The notes beneath the pieces were generated by a model. That model searched no databases. It was given only the letters and a program-made list of their open reading frames with translations, and was not told the origin of the DNA. Position numbers and translations under genes: made by a program. Positions 40,588 through 43,878 of a stretch of DNA of 64,000 nt are shown in pieces (position 1 is the first letter of the stretch; each line of letters starts with the position of its first letter). The stretch covers positions 1 to 64,000 of IMG/VR virus record IMGVR_UViG_3300048571_000088; one strand, written 5' to 3'.

Positions 40588-40712
40588 AGCAAAGGGTGGG
40601 ATTTGAACCCACGTTTCTCCCTGGAAATGGAAACATAAATATGCTGTTAATATACTTTACAGGATATATTTTATTTGTTATAGAGTATCCTAGGCCGCTA
40701 GATGACCTTTGC
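40588..40712 (-). ncRNA. tRNA body (Gly/Glu-like) with permuted ACAGCA module in the anticodon arm (copy H)
   Basis: GCAAAGG/CCUUUGC-U acceptor; D and T arms intact; insert AUAUCCU-GUAA-AGUAUAU-UAACAGCAU. Confidence 0.75.
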
Positions 40713-41470
40713 TTTTATTGATTAGTTGAATTCTAATTGAAACATTGCAGCAACGTAACAAAATTGTTGGTTGTTAGCATTGGATAATTACCTTGTATCG
40801 GTCAGGAGTATCAAATTCATCAAAATCTGTTGCATAACGACGTGGTGTATGGTTTGAAATACATTTCAAACCTTTAGAATTAAGAATGTTTGTTAATTCA
40901 TTTAATTCTTTTTCAGCTTCTAAATCAACTTGAATAACAAATTCATTTAAAACTGCATTAGGTTTATTTTTAATGTATTTTTGTAATTCAGTTACTACTT
41001 TAGATTCAGCAGTAGTTAATCTTTCAGTAGCTAATTTAACTTTAGTTGACTTGTTTAATTCGATTAAAGAGTTATACAAGTTTTCATACTCTTTCATAAT
41101 TTAATATCCAAATTCTTTGAGCTAAAGTATTTATTTAAATTAGAGTCTAACGGTCTATCAGAGAATAAATAAGTCCCATATTCATCTAATTTTTTAACGT
41201 TTAATTTTGAAAAAGTAAGACTAGTTTCGTTATACTTAACTCCGTTCATACTTGTTAAATCTATGTCGAGATTTAATTTTATTAGAATAATATGGAATTT
41301 AGTGTAGTAAGCGTTATTAAACATCATAGTCCTAACAGGACCTAATATATGAATGTTTTTCCTATCCTTAAAAGTTAAAACAAGTAAGTTATTAACAAAT
41401 TTAGTAATATCTTGACTTCGATATTTTATTTTATTATTTTTTATTTTTAAAGTATAGTTATACATTTAAG

Positions 41471-41926
41471 TTAAAATTCCTTTTGAGTAGGTATATTTTG
41501 ATCTTTAAAGTTTTCAGTATTCTTAGTCAAAGAACGTTTAACTTTACGAAGAAGTTTACTAGGTCGTTGTCTAATAGTTTCTTTAGTAGTAAAGTTATTC
41601 ACCCATTTAGGAGGTACTTGAACTAGCTTGCCACGTCTGTTTCTGTAAACAGGTTTAGAACCTTCAATTTGATTTTTATCAGCAATGTATTTATATACTA
41701 AATAAAGATTTTGTTTATAAAAAGAATATTTAACTAAATCAAACAATTCAGGATTTGTATTTGGAGTGTCTGTATAGCAAGGGTATAGACAGGAGCAAGT
41801 TTGTACAAACTTGCTAGAATGCTGTTTGTGTAAAGATTTTTTGATCTCTTTTAAACGATGTTTTGGAAGAGTTTTTAAAAACTCTTCCTCAAACAATTCT
41901 TCACATGCTTTTGAAATGTTAATCAC
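41471..41926 (-). CDS. Hypothetical protein with RRGKLV..PP.W basic module
   Basis: Shares a ~45-aa module with ORF 25789..26016. Confidence 0.65.
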   Translation of the reverse strand: MINISKACEELFEEEFLKTLPKHRLKEIKKSLHKQHSSKFVQTCSCLYPCYTDTPNTNPELFDLVKYSFYKQNLYLVYKYIADKNQIEGSKPVYRNRRGKLVQVPPKWVNNFTTKETIRQRPSKLLRKVKRSLTKNTENFKDQNIPTQKEF

Positions 41927-42976
41927 TCACTACTCCATTTAAAAGTAAGTATGTAGTACTTTCCTACAAAGATTTTAGTACTGAATGTAATTAAAGAATT
42001 AAAAGCAAAGAGGGCGCCGGTTTCATTTTTAACTTGATCTTGTTTAATCCATTCTTTAAATTTAATGTGTTTTTAATATTAAAAACACTCAGGAATATTT
42101 GAGTCGACTTTATTGATGAAAAAATCTTCATTCGTACTTATTTTAATCCTAAACGAAACTTTAAATAATAAAAATAAACCACATAAGAAGGAACACACAA
42201 CAGTGTAAATATATCAGTACTAAAAGGAAAGTACAGACTGGAACAAGATTTAACTAAAGTTGATGTAGAGGTTAGATAATAATAAAAAGTTAAAGAGTTA
42301 TCTACTTCGTTATACTTCAATACGTAAGTATACTTTTTATATGTAAACGTATATTCTGACTTATCTTTAGATTTTTTAAAATACTTAATATACTTTATAG
42401 CATAAGATAAATTTTTAAAATATTTAAAACTATATAACAAAAAGAAAATGTTTGTTATTAGGTATACAAATGCAAAAGAAAAGGGTAGAGACATTATTAA
42501 ATTCCTTTTTCATTTGCAAGTTTAAGAAGAGACTCACTGTTTTTAAACATAAGCTCTGAGAGATACTGAGACTGAAGATCTTTAATTAAAGCTGTTTGAG
42601 TTTTAATGTTTAAGTCTAGTAGTACTCCATCTAACATAACTTCAACTTCCAGTGGAGTAATTTGATTTACTGTACAAACTGAAGGGATTGATAAGTTAAT
42701 AAATGAGTCTTCATTTTTAGTCAGACTTGCGGATTCTTTGTTTGCTAAATACAGTGAATAAATAAAGCCAAGCGTGTTCTTATCTTTAAAAGAGAAAGAA
42801 GGGACTAAAGCAAACAAAAGAGGACACAAAGATAAACCTATAAAAATAATTATAAGGGTAGTTAAAAGAATCACAGGTTAAAATCCATTATGTAATTATA
42901 AAACTCTTAAGTAAGGTGGACATTATGTTTTAGTAGCTACTGAGATTGCGTAGAACTATCAGTATACCAGTAGCCT

Positions 42977-43246
42977 TCAATTTTTTGCTTCATAAGTGAT
43001 CCCGTCAATTACGACACTAGTTTGTGAAGGGTTTTTACCGACCTTATAATAAGTTGTTGTAGTGCTGACTGGACAACGTATAACTACTATTGAATTATAA
43101 GAATTACTTACTTTTTTAGCAATACAATCTTTAAACATAGGGTCACTTTCTAAAGAATTTTGATAAGAACTAAATTCCGTATGTGGTTGTGAGCAGCCTA
43201 GAAGTAACGTGGTGATTACGATGGGTATTAAGGTTTTTAAAACCAT
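42977..43246 (-). CDS. Putative lipoprotein
   Basis: Lipobox LLGC after a hydrophobic N-terminus. Confidence 0.6.
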   Translation of the reverse strand: MVLKTLIPIVITTLLLGCSQPHTEFSSYQNSLESDPMFKDCIAKKVSNSYNSIVVIRCPVSTTTTYYKVGKNPSQTSVVIDGITYEAKN

Positions 43247-43772
43247 TATAAATACTCTCTATTAATAAAAGGAGGAATCGCTGTAAAGTGTCCATTTACA
43301 AACACTAGAATAACTTAAAAACGTACCACTTCCATCTGTATAGACTTTTTTATACACAGAAAGATTTTTATAAAAAGCTGACCGATCTTTAGTAAGTTTT
43401 TTAAAAGTTTCTAAATCTAATTTAGTATTATCTGGATTAAGATTAAAACAAATAAATTGAGAAGTATTAGTAAGAATAGCAAGAGAGTTAGCTTCTTCTT
43501 TATAATCATTTTCTTTTAGAAAATTAATAACTTCATCAATCTTTAAATTATGTTTTCTCATTTAGGTACTACAATAGGTACACTTGTAGGAAAGCACATT
43601 AAAGTGCTATTAATACGTTGCTCATAAGCTTGTACACTTGCTAGGCAAGCTTGCCTGGTATTATATTGTGCAATTGGTGTACCACCATGATTAAAATAAA
43701 CTAAATTCCACATGATAATAAATTTAATCATTTTTATTAAAACCTTCTTTTAAAGTATGTGCTTACGGATTG

Positions 43773-43878
43773 TGGCAAGGGCTGGAATCGAACCAACGTT
43801 AAAATACAAATTGTATGAGTTTTAAATTTGCTGTAAGTATTCTTTACAGAATAGCATAACCAACATTTCAACCTTGCC
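43773..43878 (-). ncRNA. tRNA-like RNA with permuted ACAGCAA module (copy I)
   Basis: GGCAAGG/CCUUGCC-A acceptor; GUUGG-UUCGAUU-CCAGC T arm; insert UAUUCU-GUAA-AGAAUA-CUUACAGCAA; D and anticodon arms eroded. Confidence 0.75.

What the first reader, a model, noticed from the sequence alone, without database searches (positions are those of the whole stretch)
40588..43878. Two further module-bearing tRNA bodies at different stages of remodelling
Seen: 40588-40712 keeps acceptor, D and T arms with an ambiguous anticodon (UUC or UCC register). 43773-43878 keeps only a perfect acceptor stem and T arm. The four carriers have unrelated acceptor sequences, so the module sits in several different tRNA scaffolds. 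Inference: selection preserves the acceptor/T-arm half plus the module, not decoding.
Basis: partly seen in the sequence, partly recalled or inferred. Interest (0 to 1): 0.6.

Follow-up and report, generated by a model that had tools for sequence, protein, structure and literature searches.

The report
tRNA-shaped Y RNAs of a phage
The two elements are real tRNA-shaped small RNA genes of a jumbo phage that carry a conserved hairpin-plus-ACAGCAA module, the hallmark of a large phage-only RNA family encoded beside Ro60-like proteins, so they are most likely partner (Y-type) RNAs of an RNA-repair complex and not ordinary decoding tRNAs.

Summary
Both elements (40588-40712 and 43773-43878, minus strand) are real.

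The module is a covarying helix (AG-N6 paired with N6-CU), followed by (C)UUACAGCAA and closed by CUGU|AAAG. It occurs 8 times in this genome and more than 100 times in viral contigs. It is almost absent from cellular genomes.

Usually the helix joins the two ends of a ~60-nt hairpin RNA, or of a circularly permuted tRNA-like RNA with the topology of bacterial and phage YrlA Y RNAs. Here the order is tRNA-like and the helix is capped by a loop, which is a rare variant.

The RNAs lie beside DUF2828/DUF7788 genes. The window's copy (36191-37663) folds as Ro60. All six cultured phages examined have the module within about 400 nt of that gene.

Orthologues keep the acceptor stem, T arm and module, with compensatory changes. 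The 43773 element has lost the anticodon loop that its orthologue retains, but the 27839 lineage conserves its Pro(UGG) anticodon arm perfectly.

The module has the same design as dictyostelid Class I RNAs.

Verdict: a new topological variant of phage Y RNAs. Binding and function are inferred.

The parts
40588..40712 (-). Element C: tRNA-order module RNA. It has an acceptor stem, a Glu-like D arm, a ~52-nt insertion carrying the module between position 26 and an anticodon-like arm (loop AUUUCCA), and a T arm.
   Evidence: R1 model 68.1 bits, E 8e-13.
40641..40669 (-). Module of C: hairpin AUAUAUCCU-GUAA-AGUAUAU plus UAACAGCAU.
43773..43878 (-). Element D: tRNA-order module RNA reduced to acceptor stem, GG-containing D remnant, module, short residual hairpin and T arm.
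   Evidence: R1 72.4 bits, E 9e-14. Orthologues L218 and L221.
43828..43853 (-). Module of D: UAUUCU-GUAA-AGAAUA plus CUUACAGCAA.
27839..27958 (-). Element B: tRNA-order module RNA with an intact Pro(UGG) anticodon arm UUAUC-UUUGGGA-GAUAG. The module lies between the D arm and the anticodon arm.
   Evidence: Rfam tRNA 45.7 bits. R1 106 bits. Orthologues L225, L222 and L213a.
26445..26563 (-). Element A: tRNA-order module RNA. The module lies inside the anticodon stem CCGGU/ACCGG, with AAUGGGA before the 3' strand.
   Evidence: Rfam tRNA 46.2 bits. R1 64.6 bits.
25428..25486 (-). End-joined (hairpin-only) module RNA, 59 nt: UAAAG-AAUACU-AACAGCAA ... AGUAUUCU-G. It lies just 3' of a tRNA-like body.
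   Evidence: Rfam Dicty_Class_I_RNA 29.4 bits, below the gathering score of 41.5.
26377..26439 (-). End-joined hairpin-only module RNA, with helix AGAUUAC/GUAAUCU that is compensatory relative to the other copies.
   Evidence: Rfam Class I 24 bits.
30597..30720 (-). End-joined module RNA whose helix AGAUUAGU/ACUAAUCU encloses a D arm, an anticodon-like arm and a T arm, but no acceptor stem.
23203..23351 (-). Probable end-joined module RNA (AGAAUGU ... ACAUUCU-GU) with a long AU-rich interior. This is the weakest copy.
36191..37663 (-). Ro60-like protein (DUF2828 + DUF7788, 490 aa), the presumed protein partner of the module RNAs.
   Evidence: Pfam and PHROG matches. AF2 model pLDDT 78. Foldseek gives full-length matches to Ro60 structures 9kop, 9l5y, 1yvr and 2nvo, E 6e-7 to 2e-4.
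46255..48627 (-). Pnkp-type kinase-phosphatase-ligase (RNA repair). This is context, not part of the RNA.
45784..46251 (-). 2H phosphoesterase-like protein next to Pnkp (context). The match is marginally below Pfam's cutoff (26.2 vs 27 bits).
30724..31296 (-). NADAR-domain protein directly upstream of the 30597-30720 module RNA (context).

Best explanation
The two elements are non-coding RNAs of the Y RNA type. Each has two parts.

1. A protein-binding module. This is a covarying helix, AG-N6 paired with N6-CU, with the single-stranded motif (C)UUACAGCAA on its 3' side and the conserved flanks CUGU and AAAG.
2. A tRNA-like body: acceptor stem plus T arm, with or without D and anticodon arms.

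The module is inferred to be the docking site for the phage's Ro60-like ring protein (DUF2828/DUF7788, 36191-37663). The tRNA-like body is inferred to engage tRNA-handling factors: RNase P, the CCA-adding enzyme, modification or repair enzymes, or host anticodon nucleases as a decoy. The resulting RNP would act within the phage's RNA-repair and counter-defence gene island (Pnkp ligase, 2H, NADAR, PTH2).

[quoted passage not shown] In this window the order is that of a tRNA, and the same helix is capped by the fused end motifs CU-GUAA-AG.

Shown: the family, its structure, its covariation, its restriction to phages and its adjacency to Ro60-like genes.
Inferred: binding to the Ro60-like protein, processing, and the biological role.
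For: 1. Family membership at exact coordinates, from a model trained on foreign sequences only.

2. Helix covariation.
- 33 distinct 8-mers among 45 confident elements all have complementary partners.
- 39/109 are perfect 8/8 matches, against 0/109 for a reversed control.
- In cellular genomes the same pattern gives 1/120.
- In the tRNA-order set, acceptor, T arm and hairpin are 99/100/90% paired with two-sided changes.

3. Features conserved that the search did not impose: G follows the helix in 64/68 elements, then U or A, and C-U-U precedes ACAGCAA.

4. Circular permutation. The same parts occur as a'-ACAGCAA-(anticodon-like hairpin)-T arm-closed acceptor-D arm-a in G001, G002 and many loci. 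Rfam YrlA hits these at 38-39 bits, E about 1e-5.

5. Protein link.
- The window's DUF2828 protein folds as Ro60.
- Ro60-like ORFs occur in 21/114 loci fetched by the RNA motif alone, against 0/61 control loci and 1/120 cellular loci. That one cellular locus is itself a real module.
- Protein-seeded loci have modules within 350 nt.
- Six of six cultured phages have 1-3 modules within about 400 nt of the gene, on the same strand.
- L223 has a tRNA-order element 137 nt upstream of a Ro60-like ORF.

6. Published context.
- Ro60 partners are Y RNAs that mimic tRNA and are encoded next to the gene, including in phages (PMC4201824, PMC12135203).
- Jumbo phages carry TROVE proteins with a tRNA-like partner as an RNA-repair platform (PMC7824862).
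- Bas63 gp130, which is Ro60-like and lies next to tRNA genes, counters a defence system (PMC11482910).

7. Orthologues conserve the arms and module over the flanks, with compensatory changes.
Against: - No RNA or protein-binding data.
- The canonical Ro60-binding motif (CGAA / GNCGAAN0-1G) is absent. Rfam YrlA gives no hit on C or D, and relatives score below the gathering score of 69.
- In C and D the helix is capped, not formed by free ends. If the protein needs free ends, these forms would have to be cleaved in the loop.
- The nearest Ro60-like gene is about 3 kb from C and 6 kb from D, not adjacent.
- About half of the protein-seeded loci (L008-L012, L014, L018, L020) showed no clear module within the flanks examined.
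- Perfect conservation of the Pro(UGG) anticodon arm in the lineage of element B would also fit a decoding role.
Confidence: 0.68

Rival explanations
1. They are working tRNAs: Glu(UUC)-like for C, Pro(UGG) for A and B. The module would be an intron-like insert removed by an endonuclease and a phage RNA ligase (Pnkp here, RtcB in other phages), or tolerated as an extra arm. The permuted relatives would then be permuted tRNA genes that mature through circular intermediates, as in red algae.
For: - Complete cloverleaf parts are present apart from the insert in B, C, E (L049) and G001:8709. There the insert splits a perfect 5-bp anticodon stem CG|GCA/UGCCG with loop CUUGUAA.
- The Pro anticodon arm is 100% conserved among orthologues of B.
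- Anticodon-like loops with U33 and A37-A38 are common in the family.
- An RNA ligase gene lies nearby.
- The phage has few canonical tRNAs, and none for Pro or Glu.
Against: - The insert position varies (26/27, 28/29, 29/30, 31/32, or replacing the loop), with unpaired linkers of 0-13 nt. No fixed bulge-helix-bulge-like geometry defines the cut sites (sequence reading).
- D, L224 and the roughly 27 hairpin-only and 25 T-arm-only relatives cannot give a tRNA, yet they keep the module under covariation.
- C has C at position 37, and A and E have A at position 33.
- The module sequence itself is the most conserved part, which is unexpected for a discarded intron.
- No group I core is present.
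- No splicing endonuclease gene was seen among the ORFs scanned.
Confidence: 0.13
2. The module is mainly an RNA-processing signal: a site for a host or phage endonuclease that releases neighbouring tRNAs and small RNAs from long transcripts. Its presence inside tRNA-like bodies would be a by-product of recombination between such sites.
For: - Copies lie directly after tRNA 3' ends (25428-25486, 26377-26439; L041 after tRNA-His) and in tandem arrays between tRNAs.
- The conserved flanks AAAG and CUGU coincide with the mapped mature ends of the look-alike dictyostelid Class I RNAs (PMC7919456).
- No promoter enrichment near C and D.
Against: - A mere cut site would not need the conserved single-stranded ACAGCAA or a tight link to Ro60-like genes.
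- Orthologous tRNA-order elements keep the module and the body together across phages whose neighbouring coding DNA is only about 65% identical at the nucleotide level.
Confidence: 0.12
3. It is a DNA-level element: a palindromic mobile or recombination site (REP/MITE-like or hairpin promoter) that inserts into or next to tRNA genes. C and D would then be disrupted pseudo-tRNAs.
For: - The core is a DNA palindrome (TATTCTGTAAAGAATA).
- There are many copies per genome, clustered in tRNA regions.
- D looks degraded.
Against: - All copies lie on the transcribed strand, in a fixed orientation relative to the tRNA parts.
- The asymmetric ACAGCAA lies always 3' of one arm.
- Some helices contain G-U pairs.
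- The helix partners can be 30-200 nt apart and enclose folded tRNA-like domains that covary themselves.
- Orthologues show compensatory changes rather than decay.
- No transposase is associated.
Confidence: 0.04

Closest known systems
YrlA-type bacterial and phage Y RNAs (Rfam RF02553), partners of Ro60/Rsr
   Same: - Encoded next to a Ro60-type gene, often in several copies.
- Two-domain design: a protein-binding stem with a conserved motif on its 5' strand, plus a tRNA-like domain with T arm, D arm and a 7-bp acceptor-like stem.
- Found in phage RNA-repair gene neighbourhoods.
- Permuted relatives of C and D hit the YrlA model at 38-39 bits. This includes a mycobacteriophage RNA directly beside an annotated Ro-like gene.
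   Different: - C and D have tRNA order with an open acceptor stem and a capped binding stem. YrlA has the reverse arrangement.
- The motif is AG-stem plus UUACAGCAA, not GNCGAAN0-1G/CGAA.
- The partner protein is the DUF2828/DUF7788 branch, not Pfam TROVE.
- Scores are below Rfam's gathering score, and C and D get no hit at all.
- Many members keep an extra anticodon-like hairpin.
Dictyostelid Class I RNAs (Rfam RF01414)
   Same: - Same design in detail: a short covarying stem joining the ends, AAG at the start and CUGU at the end, with the G paired to the C.
- The motif CCUUACAGCAA lies directly after the 5' strand of the stem. The phage consensus is C-U-U-ACAGCAA (PMC7919456).
- Variable interior, and a size of ~60 nt in the hairpin-only phage members.
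- Sub-threshold Rfam hits of 24-32 bits on phage members.
   Different: - Class I RNAs are eukaryotic, have DUSE promoters, are known to bind the RRM protein Rnp1A, and are reported as unique to Dictyostelia.
- The phage stem is one pair longer relative to the motif.
- C and D are twice as long, embed the stem in a tRNA body and cap it.
- All hits are below the gathering score of 41.5.
- Common descent is not shown.
Canonical tRNA
   Same: - 7-bp acceptor stem.
- T arm with GGUUCRANNCC.
- D arm with GG (in C).
- Anticodon-like arm (in C).
- Located in the phage's tRNA region on the same strand.
   Different: - Inserts of 45-60 nt at or in the anticodon stem.
- D lacks a D stem and an anticodon loop.
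- Rfam tRNA scores are below threshold (25.6 bits, or no hit).
- Non-standard positions 33 and 37 in several members.
Permuted and intron-containing tRNA genes of archaea and algae (bulge-helix-bulge processing)
   Same: The same tRNA parts occur both in normal order with an insert and in permuted order with the insert's two halves at the ends, as in Cyanidioschyzon.
   Different: - No bulge-helix-bulge geometry.
- Variable junction positions.
- Many members have no tRNA body.
- No splicing endonuclease gene was seen.
- The hosts are bacteria.

Membership tests
Y RNA / YrlA (RF02553) | Encoded next to a Ro60-type gene | tested here: met
   At family level the modules lie within 400 nt of DUF2828 Ro60-like genes in 6/6 cultured phages and in many metagenomic loci. 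In the window the gene lies 2.9 kb from C and 6.1 kb from D, inside the same tRNA/RNA-repair block.
Y RNA / YrlA (RF02553) | Stem formed by the 5' and 3' ends carrying the Ro60-binding motif (CGAA / GNCGAAN0-1G) | tested here: not met
   C and D have the stem capped by GUAA, and the motif is AG-stem plus UUACAGCAA. The best alignment to the YrlA 5' strand is only partial. End-joined relatives have the stem but not the CGAA motif.
Y RNA / YrlA (RF02553) | tRNA-like domain in the order T arm - closed acceptor-like stem - D arm | tested here: not met
   C and D have tRNA order. 24 of 76 end-joined relatives do have the YrlA order.
Y RNA / YrlA (RF02553) | Rfam gathering score (69 bits) | tested here: not met
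   No YrlA hit in window 20000-64000 at E up to 10. Relatives score 28-39 bits.
Y RNA / YrlA (RF02553) | Physical binding to the Ro60 protein | not testable with these tools
   No RNA-protein docking or experimental data are available.
tRNA (RF00005) | 7-bp acceptor stem and T arm with a conserved T loop | tested here: met
   Both are perfect in C and D and covary across 18 elements.
tRNA (RF00005) | D arm, and a 5-bp anticodon stem with a 7-nt loop (U33, purine 37), contiguous with the core | tested here: not met
   C has a D arm and a hairpin with loop AUUUCCA (U33 present, but C at position 37), separated from the D arm by about 52 nt. D has neither a D stem nor a 7-nt loop.
tRNA (RF00005) | Rfam gathering score (29 bits) | tested here: not met
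   D scores 25.6 bits (E 0.36). C has no hit at E up to 10. A and B pass, at 46 bits.
tRNA (RF00005) | Aminoacylation and decoding | not testable with these tools
   No data. No CCA is encoded after C or D (sequence).
Dictyostelid Class I RNA (RF01414) | Short covarying stem joining the 5' and 3' ends, AAG start and CUGU end | tested here: inconclusive
   The sequence features are present (CU-GUAA-AG in C and D; AAAG...CUG(U/A) in end-joined copies). In C and D the 'ends' are joined into a loop, and the true RNA ends are unknown.
Dictyostelid Class I RNA (RF01414) | 11-nt motif CCUUACAGCAA directly after the 5' strand of the stem | tested here: met
   D has ACUUACAGCAA and C has UAUUAACAGCAU. 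The family consensus is C-U-U-ACAGCAA.
Dictyostelid Class I RNA (RF01414) | Length 42-65 nt; Rfam gathering score 41.5 bits; dictyostelid genome with a DUSE promoter | tested here: not met
   C is 125 nt and D is 106 nt. The best Rfam scores are 29.4 bits in the window (25428-25482) and 32 bits elsewhere. The source is a phage.
tRNA intron (group I or bulge-helix-bulge) | Catalytic group I core, or a bulge-helix-bulge at a position whose removal restores a canonical tRNA | tested here: not met
   There is no Intron_gpI hit in the window. Inserts are 45-60 nt, and junctions vary between 26/27 and 31/32 with irregular linkers.

The most novel reading that the evidence does not exclude
The stem-plus-UUACAGCAA module with AAG/CUGU flanks may be an ancient, portable docking site for DUF2828-type Ro60 proteins.

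On this reading, the 'Dictyostelia-only' Class I RNAs would be Y RNAs of this type, either homologous to the phage RNAs or acquired from phage or bacterial prey.

The tRNA-order elements in this window would be genuine tRNA / Y RNA chimeras. [quoted passage not shown] Through them the phage would couple a Ro60-like ring to specific tRNA identities (Pro, Glu, Arg), to sense, shield or repair anticodon-nuclease damage.
Probability: 0.25. Interest if true: 0.85.

Novelty: new variant of a known kind. Interest (0 to 1): 0.68.

Why it matters
- Ro60-like proteins are widespread in phages. This family matched 710 cultured phage records and thousands of metagenomic clusters. One of them counters a bacterial defence system, but their RNA partners are mostly undefined.
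- The module gives a simple, searchable signature for those partner RNAs. It places candidate Y RNAs next to the Ro-like genes of FelixO1-like, P100-like, Campylobacter, Staphylococcus, cyanobacterial and mycobacterial phages.
- The tRNA-order forms in this window show that the same two-domain RNA can exist in both circular permutations. This bears on how Y RNAs arose from tRNAs, and it offers natural 'tRNA-scaffold' constructs for testing what the tRNA half does.
- The near-identity of design with dictyostelid Class I RNAs, whose function is an open question, suggests a concrete protein partner to test in amoebae.

Tried and rejected
- ARAGORN intron models (Val-AAC, Cys-ACA, Leu-UAA and others) are not credible, because they leave no paired anticodon stem.
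- No similar DNA was found in the cultured-phage collection for 38.5-46 kb of the window.
- The neighbouring 369-aa protein has no relatives in viral or metagenome contigs, so no orthologue of C could be fetched by synteny. Metagenome records behind L218/L219 could not be searched for the C orthologue.
- An exact-pattern scan with the strict module found only two true relatives among 61 mostly chance hits. Adding the T-loop to the pattern is what opened up the family.
- Self-cleaving ribozyme, CRISPR-repeat and IS200/IS605-end readings were considered from the sequence and dropped. There are no core motifs, no regular spacing, and the helix partners pair with each other instead of forming two separate end hairpins.
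- Sigma-70 promoter and terminator scans around C and D gave nothing above shuffled expectation.
- Whether Dictyostelium encodes a DUF2828 protein could not be settled. The atlas and the word search returned only viral and metagenomic clusters without taxa, and papers gave nothing.
- The large representative-protein search, complex prediction and alternative genetic codes were not used.

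
Full report
SETTING
The window is the first 64 kb of a 242,588-bp IMG/VR virus record (CheckV 100% complete, about 29% GC), with genes almost all on the minus strand. PHROG and Pfam matches are those of a tailed phage.

CHECK OF THE OBSERVATION
Both elements are present at the stated coordinates on the minus strand.

Element C (40588-40712) has:
- a perfect 7-bp acceptor stem;
- a D arm that looks like that of tRNA-Glu;
- a ~52-nt insertion;
- a hairpin UUUCC-AUUUCCA-GGGAG;
- a canonical T arm.

Element D (43773-43878) has:
- a perfect acceptor stem and T arm;
- no D stem and no 7-nt anticodon loop.

Standard tools see them poorly. ARAGORN misses both unless introns are allowed. 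Rfam tRNA gives 25.6 bits for D, below its gathering score of 29, and nothing for C.

The shared module is CUGUAAAG-N7-ACAGCA. It matches 5 times in the window against 0.03 expected, always on the minus strand. There are no other matches in the genome. Looser searches add three more copies in the window.

WHAT THE MODULE IS
It is a helix, here called a/a'. In the commonest version a = GUAUUCU and a' = AGAAUAC. The a' strand is always followed by (C)U(U/A)ACAGCAA.

Two topologies occur.
- In C, D and two other carriers (26445-26563 and 27839-27958) the order is a-GUAA-a'. This forms a capped hairpin inside a tRNA-like body.
- In four other window copies (25428-25486, 26377-26439, 30597-30720, 23203-23351) the order is a'-ACAGCAA-...-a. 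The helix then joins the two ends of a unit.

The helix sequence differs between copies with exact compensation, for example AGAUUAC/GUAAUCU and AGAUUAGU/ACUAAUCU.

RELATIVES ELSEWHERE
A strict pattern scan of viral contigs gave two true relatives. Their records, G001 (87 kb) and G002 (25 kb), hold five and four copies.

In G001 and G002 the end-joined units enclose, in this order:
1. a short anticodon-like hairpin;
2. a variable region;
3. a T arm;
4. a 7-bp acceptor stem closed by an 8-11-nt loop;
5. a D arm.

This is a circularly permuted tRNA. One example is G001:8697-8819. There the anticodon stem CG|GCA/UGCCG with loop CUUGUAA is perfect, and the RNA ends emerge between positions 28 and 29.

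Most of them carry the helix partner 60-190 nt downstream.

Statistics on the helix:
- Among 109 non-redundant motif hits, 39 have a perfect 8/8 Watson-Crick partner. The reversed-sequence control gives 0.
- 45 confident elements show 33 different 8-mers, all complementary. Only the first two pairs (A-U, G-C) are fixed.
- Features not imposed by the search are also conserved. G follows the helix in 64/68 elements, then U (44) or A (22). C-U-U precedes ACAGCAA in about 47/68.
- The same pattern in 596 Gb of bacterial and archaeal genomes gave 120 loci whose partner scores look like the control. Only one or two look real. The family is therefore essentially phage-borne.

Of 76 end-joined elements:
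- 24 enclose T arm + closed acceptor + D arm;
- 25 enclose a T arm only (by a simple detector);
- 27 are plain hairpins of 61-81 nt.

THE tRNA-ORDER VARIANT
The tRNA-order form is rare. In IMG/VR only L136 and L049 have it, besides this genome. A metagenome scan added 12 more.

The 18 elements were aligned as A4, and the named structure was counted:

| Helix | Cells paired | Pairs with changes on both sides |
|---|---|---|
| Acceptor stem | 99% | 7 of 7 |
| T arm | 100% | 3 of 5 |
| Module hairpin | 90% | 6 of 7 |

No shuffle out of 500 reached the observed values, and all slid controls were far lower.

A covariance model was built from the 14 elements that are not from this window (A5, R1). 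It finds exactly four hits in the window and in the whole genome:

| Element | Coordinates | Bits |
|---|---|---|
| B | 27839-27958 | 106 |
| D | 43773-43878 | 72.4 |
| C | 40588-40712 | 68.1 |
| A | 26445-26563 | 64.6 |

Ordinary tRNAs score at most 32 bits.

The position of the module relative to the tRNA body varies:
- between position 26 and the anticodon stem (B, C);
- inside the 5' strand of the stem (L049 at 29/30);
- replacing or opening the loop (A, L215, L223);
- with nothing else left (D, and L224 at 79 nt).

L218 and L221 come from a syntenic relative with about 65% nucleotide identity in coding regions.

D compared with L218:

| Region | Identity |
|---|---|
| Acceptor stem | 14/14 |
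| Module | 25/27 |
| T arm | 15/17, with a U-A to A-U compensatory pair |
| Region after the module | 67% |
| Flanks | 44-55% |

L218 keeps an anticodon arm ACAAA-CUCCUAA-UUUGU. D has an 8-nt deletion there. D is thus a further-reduced form.

For B, three orthologues (L225, L222, L213a) show four different module helices. All are complementary. Acceptor and T stems are covarying. The Pro(UGG) anticodon arm is 17/17, 17/17 and 16/17 identical.

In some lineages the anticodon arm is under selection too. No orthologue of C could be fetched. L226 and L215 are the nearest in type.

THE PROTEIN LINK
The 490-aa ORF 36191-37663 carries DUF2828 and DUF7788 and matches a PHROG named 'RNA-binding protein'. 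Its AlphaFold model has pLDDT 78 and was built from an alignment of 15 sequences. It matches Ro60 structures over its full length:
- Thermus phage phiLo Ro60 (9kop, 9l5y);
- Xenopus Ro60 (1yvr, 1yvp, 2i91);
- D. radiodurans Rsr (2nvo);
- human Ro60.
E-values run from 6e-7 to 2e-4, with probability 1.00.

Co-occurrence of the RNA motif and Ro60-like ORFs:
- Ro60-like ORFs, detected with an HMM built from that alignment, occur in 21 of 114 loci fetched by the RNA motif alone.
- They occur in 0 of 61 control loci.
- They occur in 1 of 120 cellular loci, and that one is itself a real module.
- In the positive loci the RNAs are typically immediately up- or downstream on the same strand. L161, for example, has five modules just before the gene.
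- Conversely, loci fetched through the protein have modules within 350 nt in L006/L007, L013, L016 (two), L019 and L021. About half of the protein-seeded loci showed none.

The protein family is present in 710 cultured phage records. In all six that I opened, 1-3 modules lie within about 400 nt of the gene:
- Listeria phage cka15;
- Felixounavirus VpaE1;
- Mycobacterium phage Moostard;
- Campylobacter phage CP30A;
- Staphylococcus phage BE02;
- Synechococcus phage BUCT-ZZ01.

In Moostard the middle RNA is also the Rfam YrlA hit, at 37.9 bits.

The metagenomic tRNA-order element in L223 lies 137 nt upstream of a Ro60-like ORF.

NEIGHBOURHOOD
The window's tRNA block also encodes the following:
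- NADAR (30724-31296);
- a class II aminoacyl-tRNA-synthetase-core-like ORF;
- PTH2;
- TelA;
- a PP-loop protein;
- a 2H phosphoesterase-like protein, marginally below Pfam's cutoff (26.2 vs 27 bits);
- a Pnkp-type kinase-phosphatase-ligase.

Phage cka15 has an annotated tRNA splicing ligase and a YbiA-like gene (the annotator's note, by analogy to Phage K; I read YbiA-like as NADAR) after its Ro-like gene.

COMPARISON WITH KNOWN SYSTEMS

Y RNAs
- Y RNAs are the partners of Ro60.
- Bacterial and phage YrlA RNAs have an end-joining stem with a conserved motif and a tRNA-like domain in the order T arm, acceptor-like stem-loop, D arm.
- They are encoded beside the gene. One of them is cut by RNase P and receives CCA (PMC4201824).
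- Phage Ro60 binds two adjacent Y-like RNAs (PMC12135203).
- The end-joined relatives of C and D have this architecture and context, and they hit the YrlA model at 38-39 bits, below its gathering score of 69. They carry a different motif.
- C and D are the opposite circular permutation.

Dictyostelid Class I RNAs
- These are described as starting with AAG, followed by a 6-bp covarying stem.
- The stem is followed by the 11-nt motif given by the Rfam consensus (CCUUACAGCAA).
- They have a variable interior, end in CUGU, and are about 60 nt long. They are reported as absent outside Dictyostelia (PMC7919456).
- The phage consensus has the same design.
- Rfam's Class I model hits phage hairpins at 24-32 bits, below its gathering score of 41.5.
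- Whether this reflects homology or convergence on one protein partner is open.
- I could not establish whether dictyostelids encode DUF2828 proteins.

MOST LIKELY MECHANISM
- Inferred: the module docks the Ro60-like ring.
- Inferred: the tRNA-like half recruits tRNA-handling or repair enzymes, or acts as a decoy for anticodon nucleases.
- Inferred: the RNP works in RNA repair or counter-defence.

This is consistent with the Ro60-like gp130 of Bas63 countering a defence system (PMC11482910) and with the view of TROVE proteins in jumbo phages as a repair platform (PMC7824862).

The capped CU-GUAA-AG loop keeps both end motifs. Either the protein reads them as sequence, or the loop is cleaved to give a two-piece RNA equivalent to RNase-P-processed YrlA.

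LIMITS
- There is no expression, end-mapping, splicing or binding evidence.
- A role as decoding tRNAs with a removable or tolerated insert cannot be excluded for A, B and C. It is very unlikely for D.
- No alternative genetic code was used.

Noticed in passing
L227 2461-3012 (Listeria phage cka15, record about 26195-26746): Rfam ROOL RNA (RF03087) hit at 90.1 bits (gathering score 99.1), E 5e-17. It coincides with the 'most highly transcribed region 26,236-26,727' that the cka15 multi-omics paper (PMC12282133) left unexplained and annotated as three small CDS. The three module hairpins lie at record positions about 25277-25557, just upstream of the Ro-like gene CKA15_055, whose protein was detected in virions.
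   Followed up: partly
window 37735-37843 (-): Odd tRNA (Rfam 38.3 bits) with a 35-nt variable arm and anticodon loop CUAAAAA, directly upstream of the Ro60-like gene. It carries no module. It may be another partner RNA or an unusual type II tRNA.
   Followed up: no
window 30597-30720 (-): The module helix AGAUUAGU/ACUAAUCU encloses a D arm, an anticodon-like arm and a T arm but no acceptor stem. In effect the module helix stands in for the acceptor stem. It lies directly after the NADAR gene.
   Followed up: partly
window 25492-25560 (-): tRNA-like body with an acceptor-like stem UAGACG/CGUCUA, an arm CACGA-CUAAUAA-UCGUG and a T-like arm with loop CUCGAGU, immediately followed by the hairpin-only module RNA. 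No tRNA tool detects it.
   Followed up: no
window 30724-36093 and 45784-48627 (-): A dense set of RNA-repair and translation-related genes: NADAR, a class II aaRS-core-like ORF (31289-31996), PTH2, TelA, a PP-loop (TilS-like) protein, a 2H phosphoesterase-like protein and a Pnkp kinase-phosphatase-ligase.
   Followed up: partly
L226 274-389 and L215 845-959: tRNA-order module RNAs with Glu/Asp-type D arms whose anticodon-like loops read AUUCAAA and AUUCACA (UCA, which would pair with UGA).
   Followed up: no
L092 12728-12977 (G001): Group I intron (96 bits) next to weak tmRNA and permuted-tmRNA hits in the related viral record that carries five module RNAs.
   Followed up: no
L283 (Bacillales MAG) and L246: These are the only convincing module copies among 120 cellular-genome loci. 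L283 also holds a Ro60-like ORF about 300 nt away, so it is probably phage or prophage DNA binned into a MAG.
   Followed up: partly
window 26436-26444 and the 3' flanks of the other tRNA-order elements: Element A and 4 of the 14 foreign tRNA-order elements (L214, L215, L219, L223) have an encoded CCA after the discriminator base. C and D are followed by CAA.
   Followed up: no
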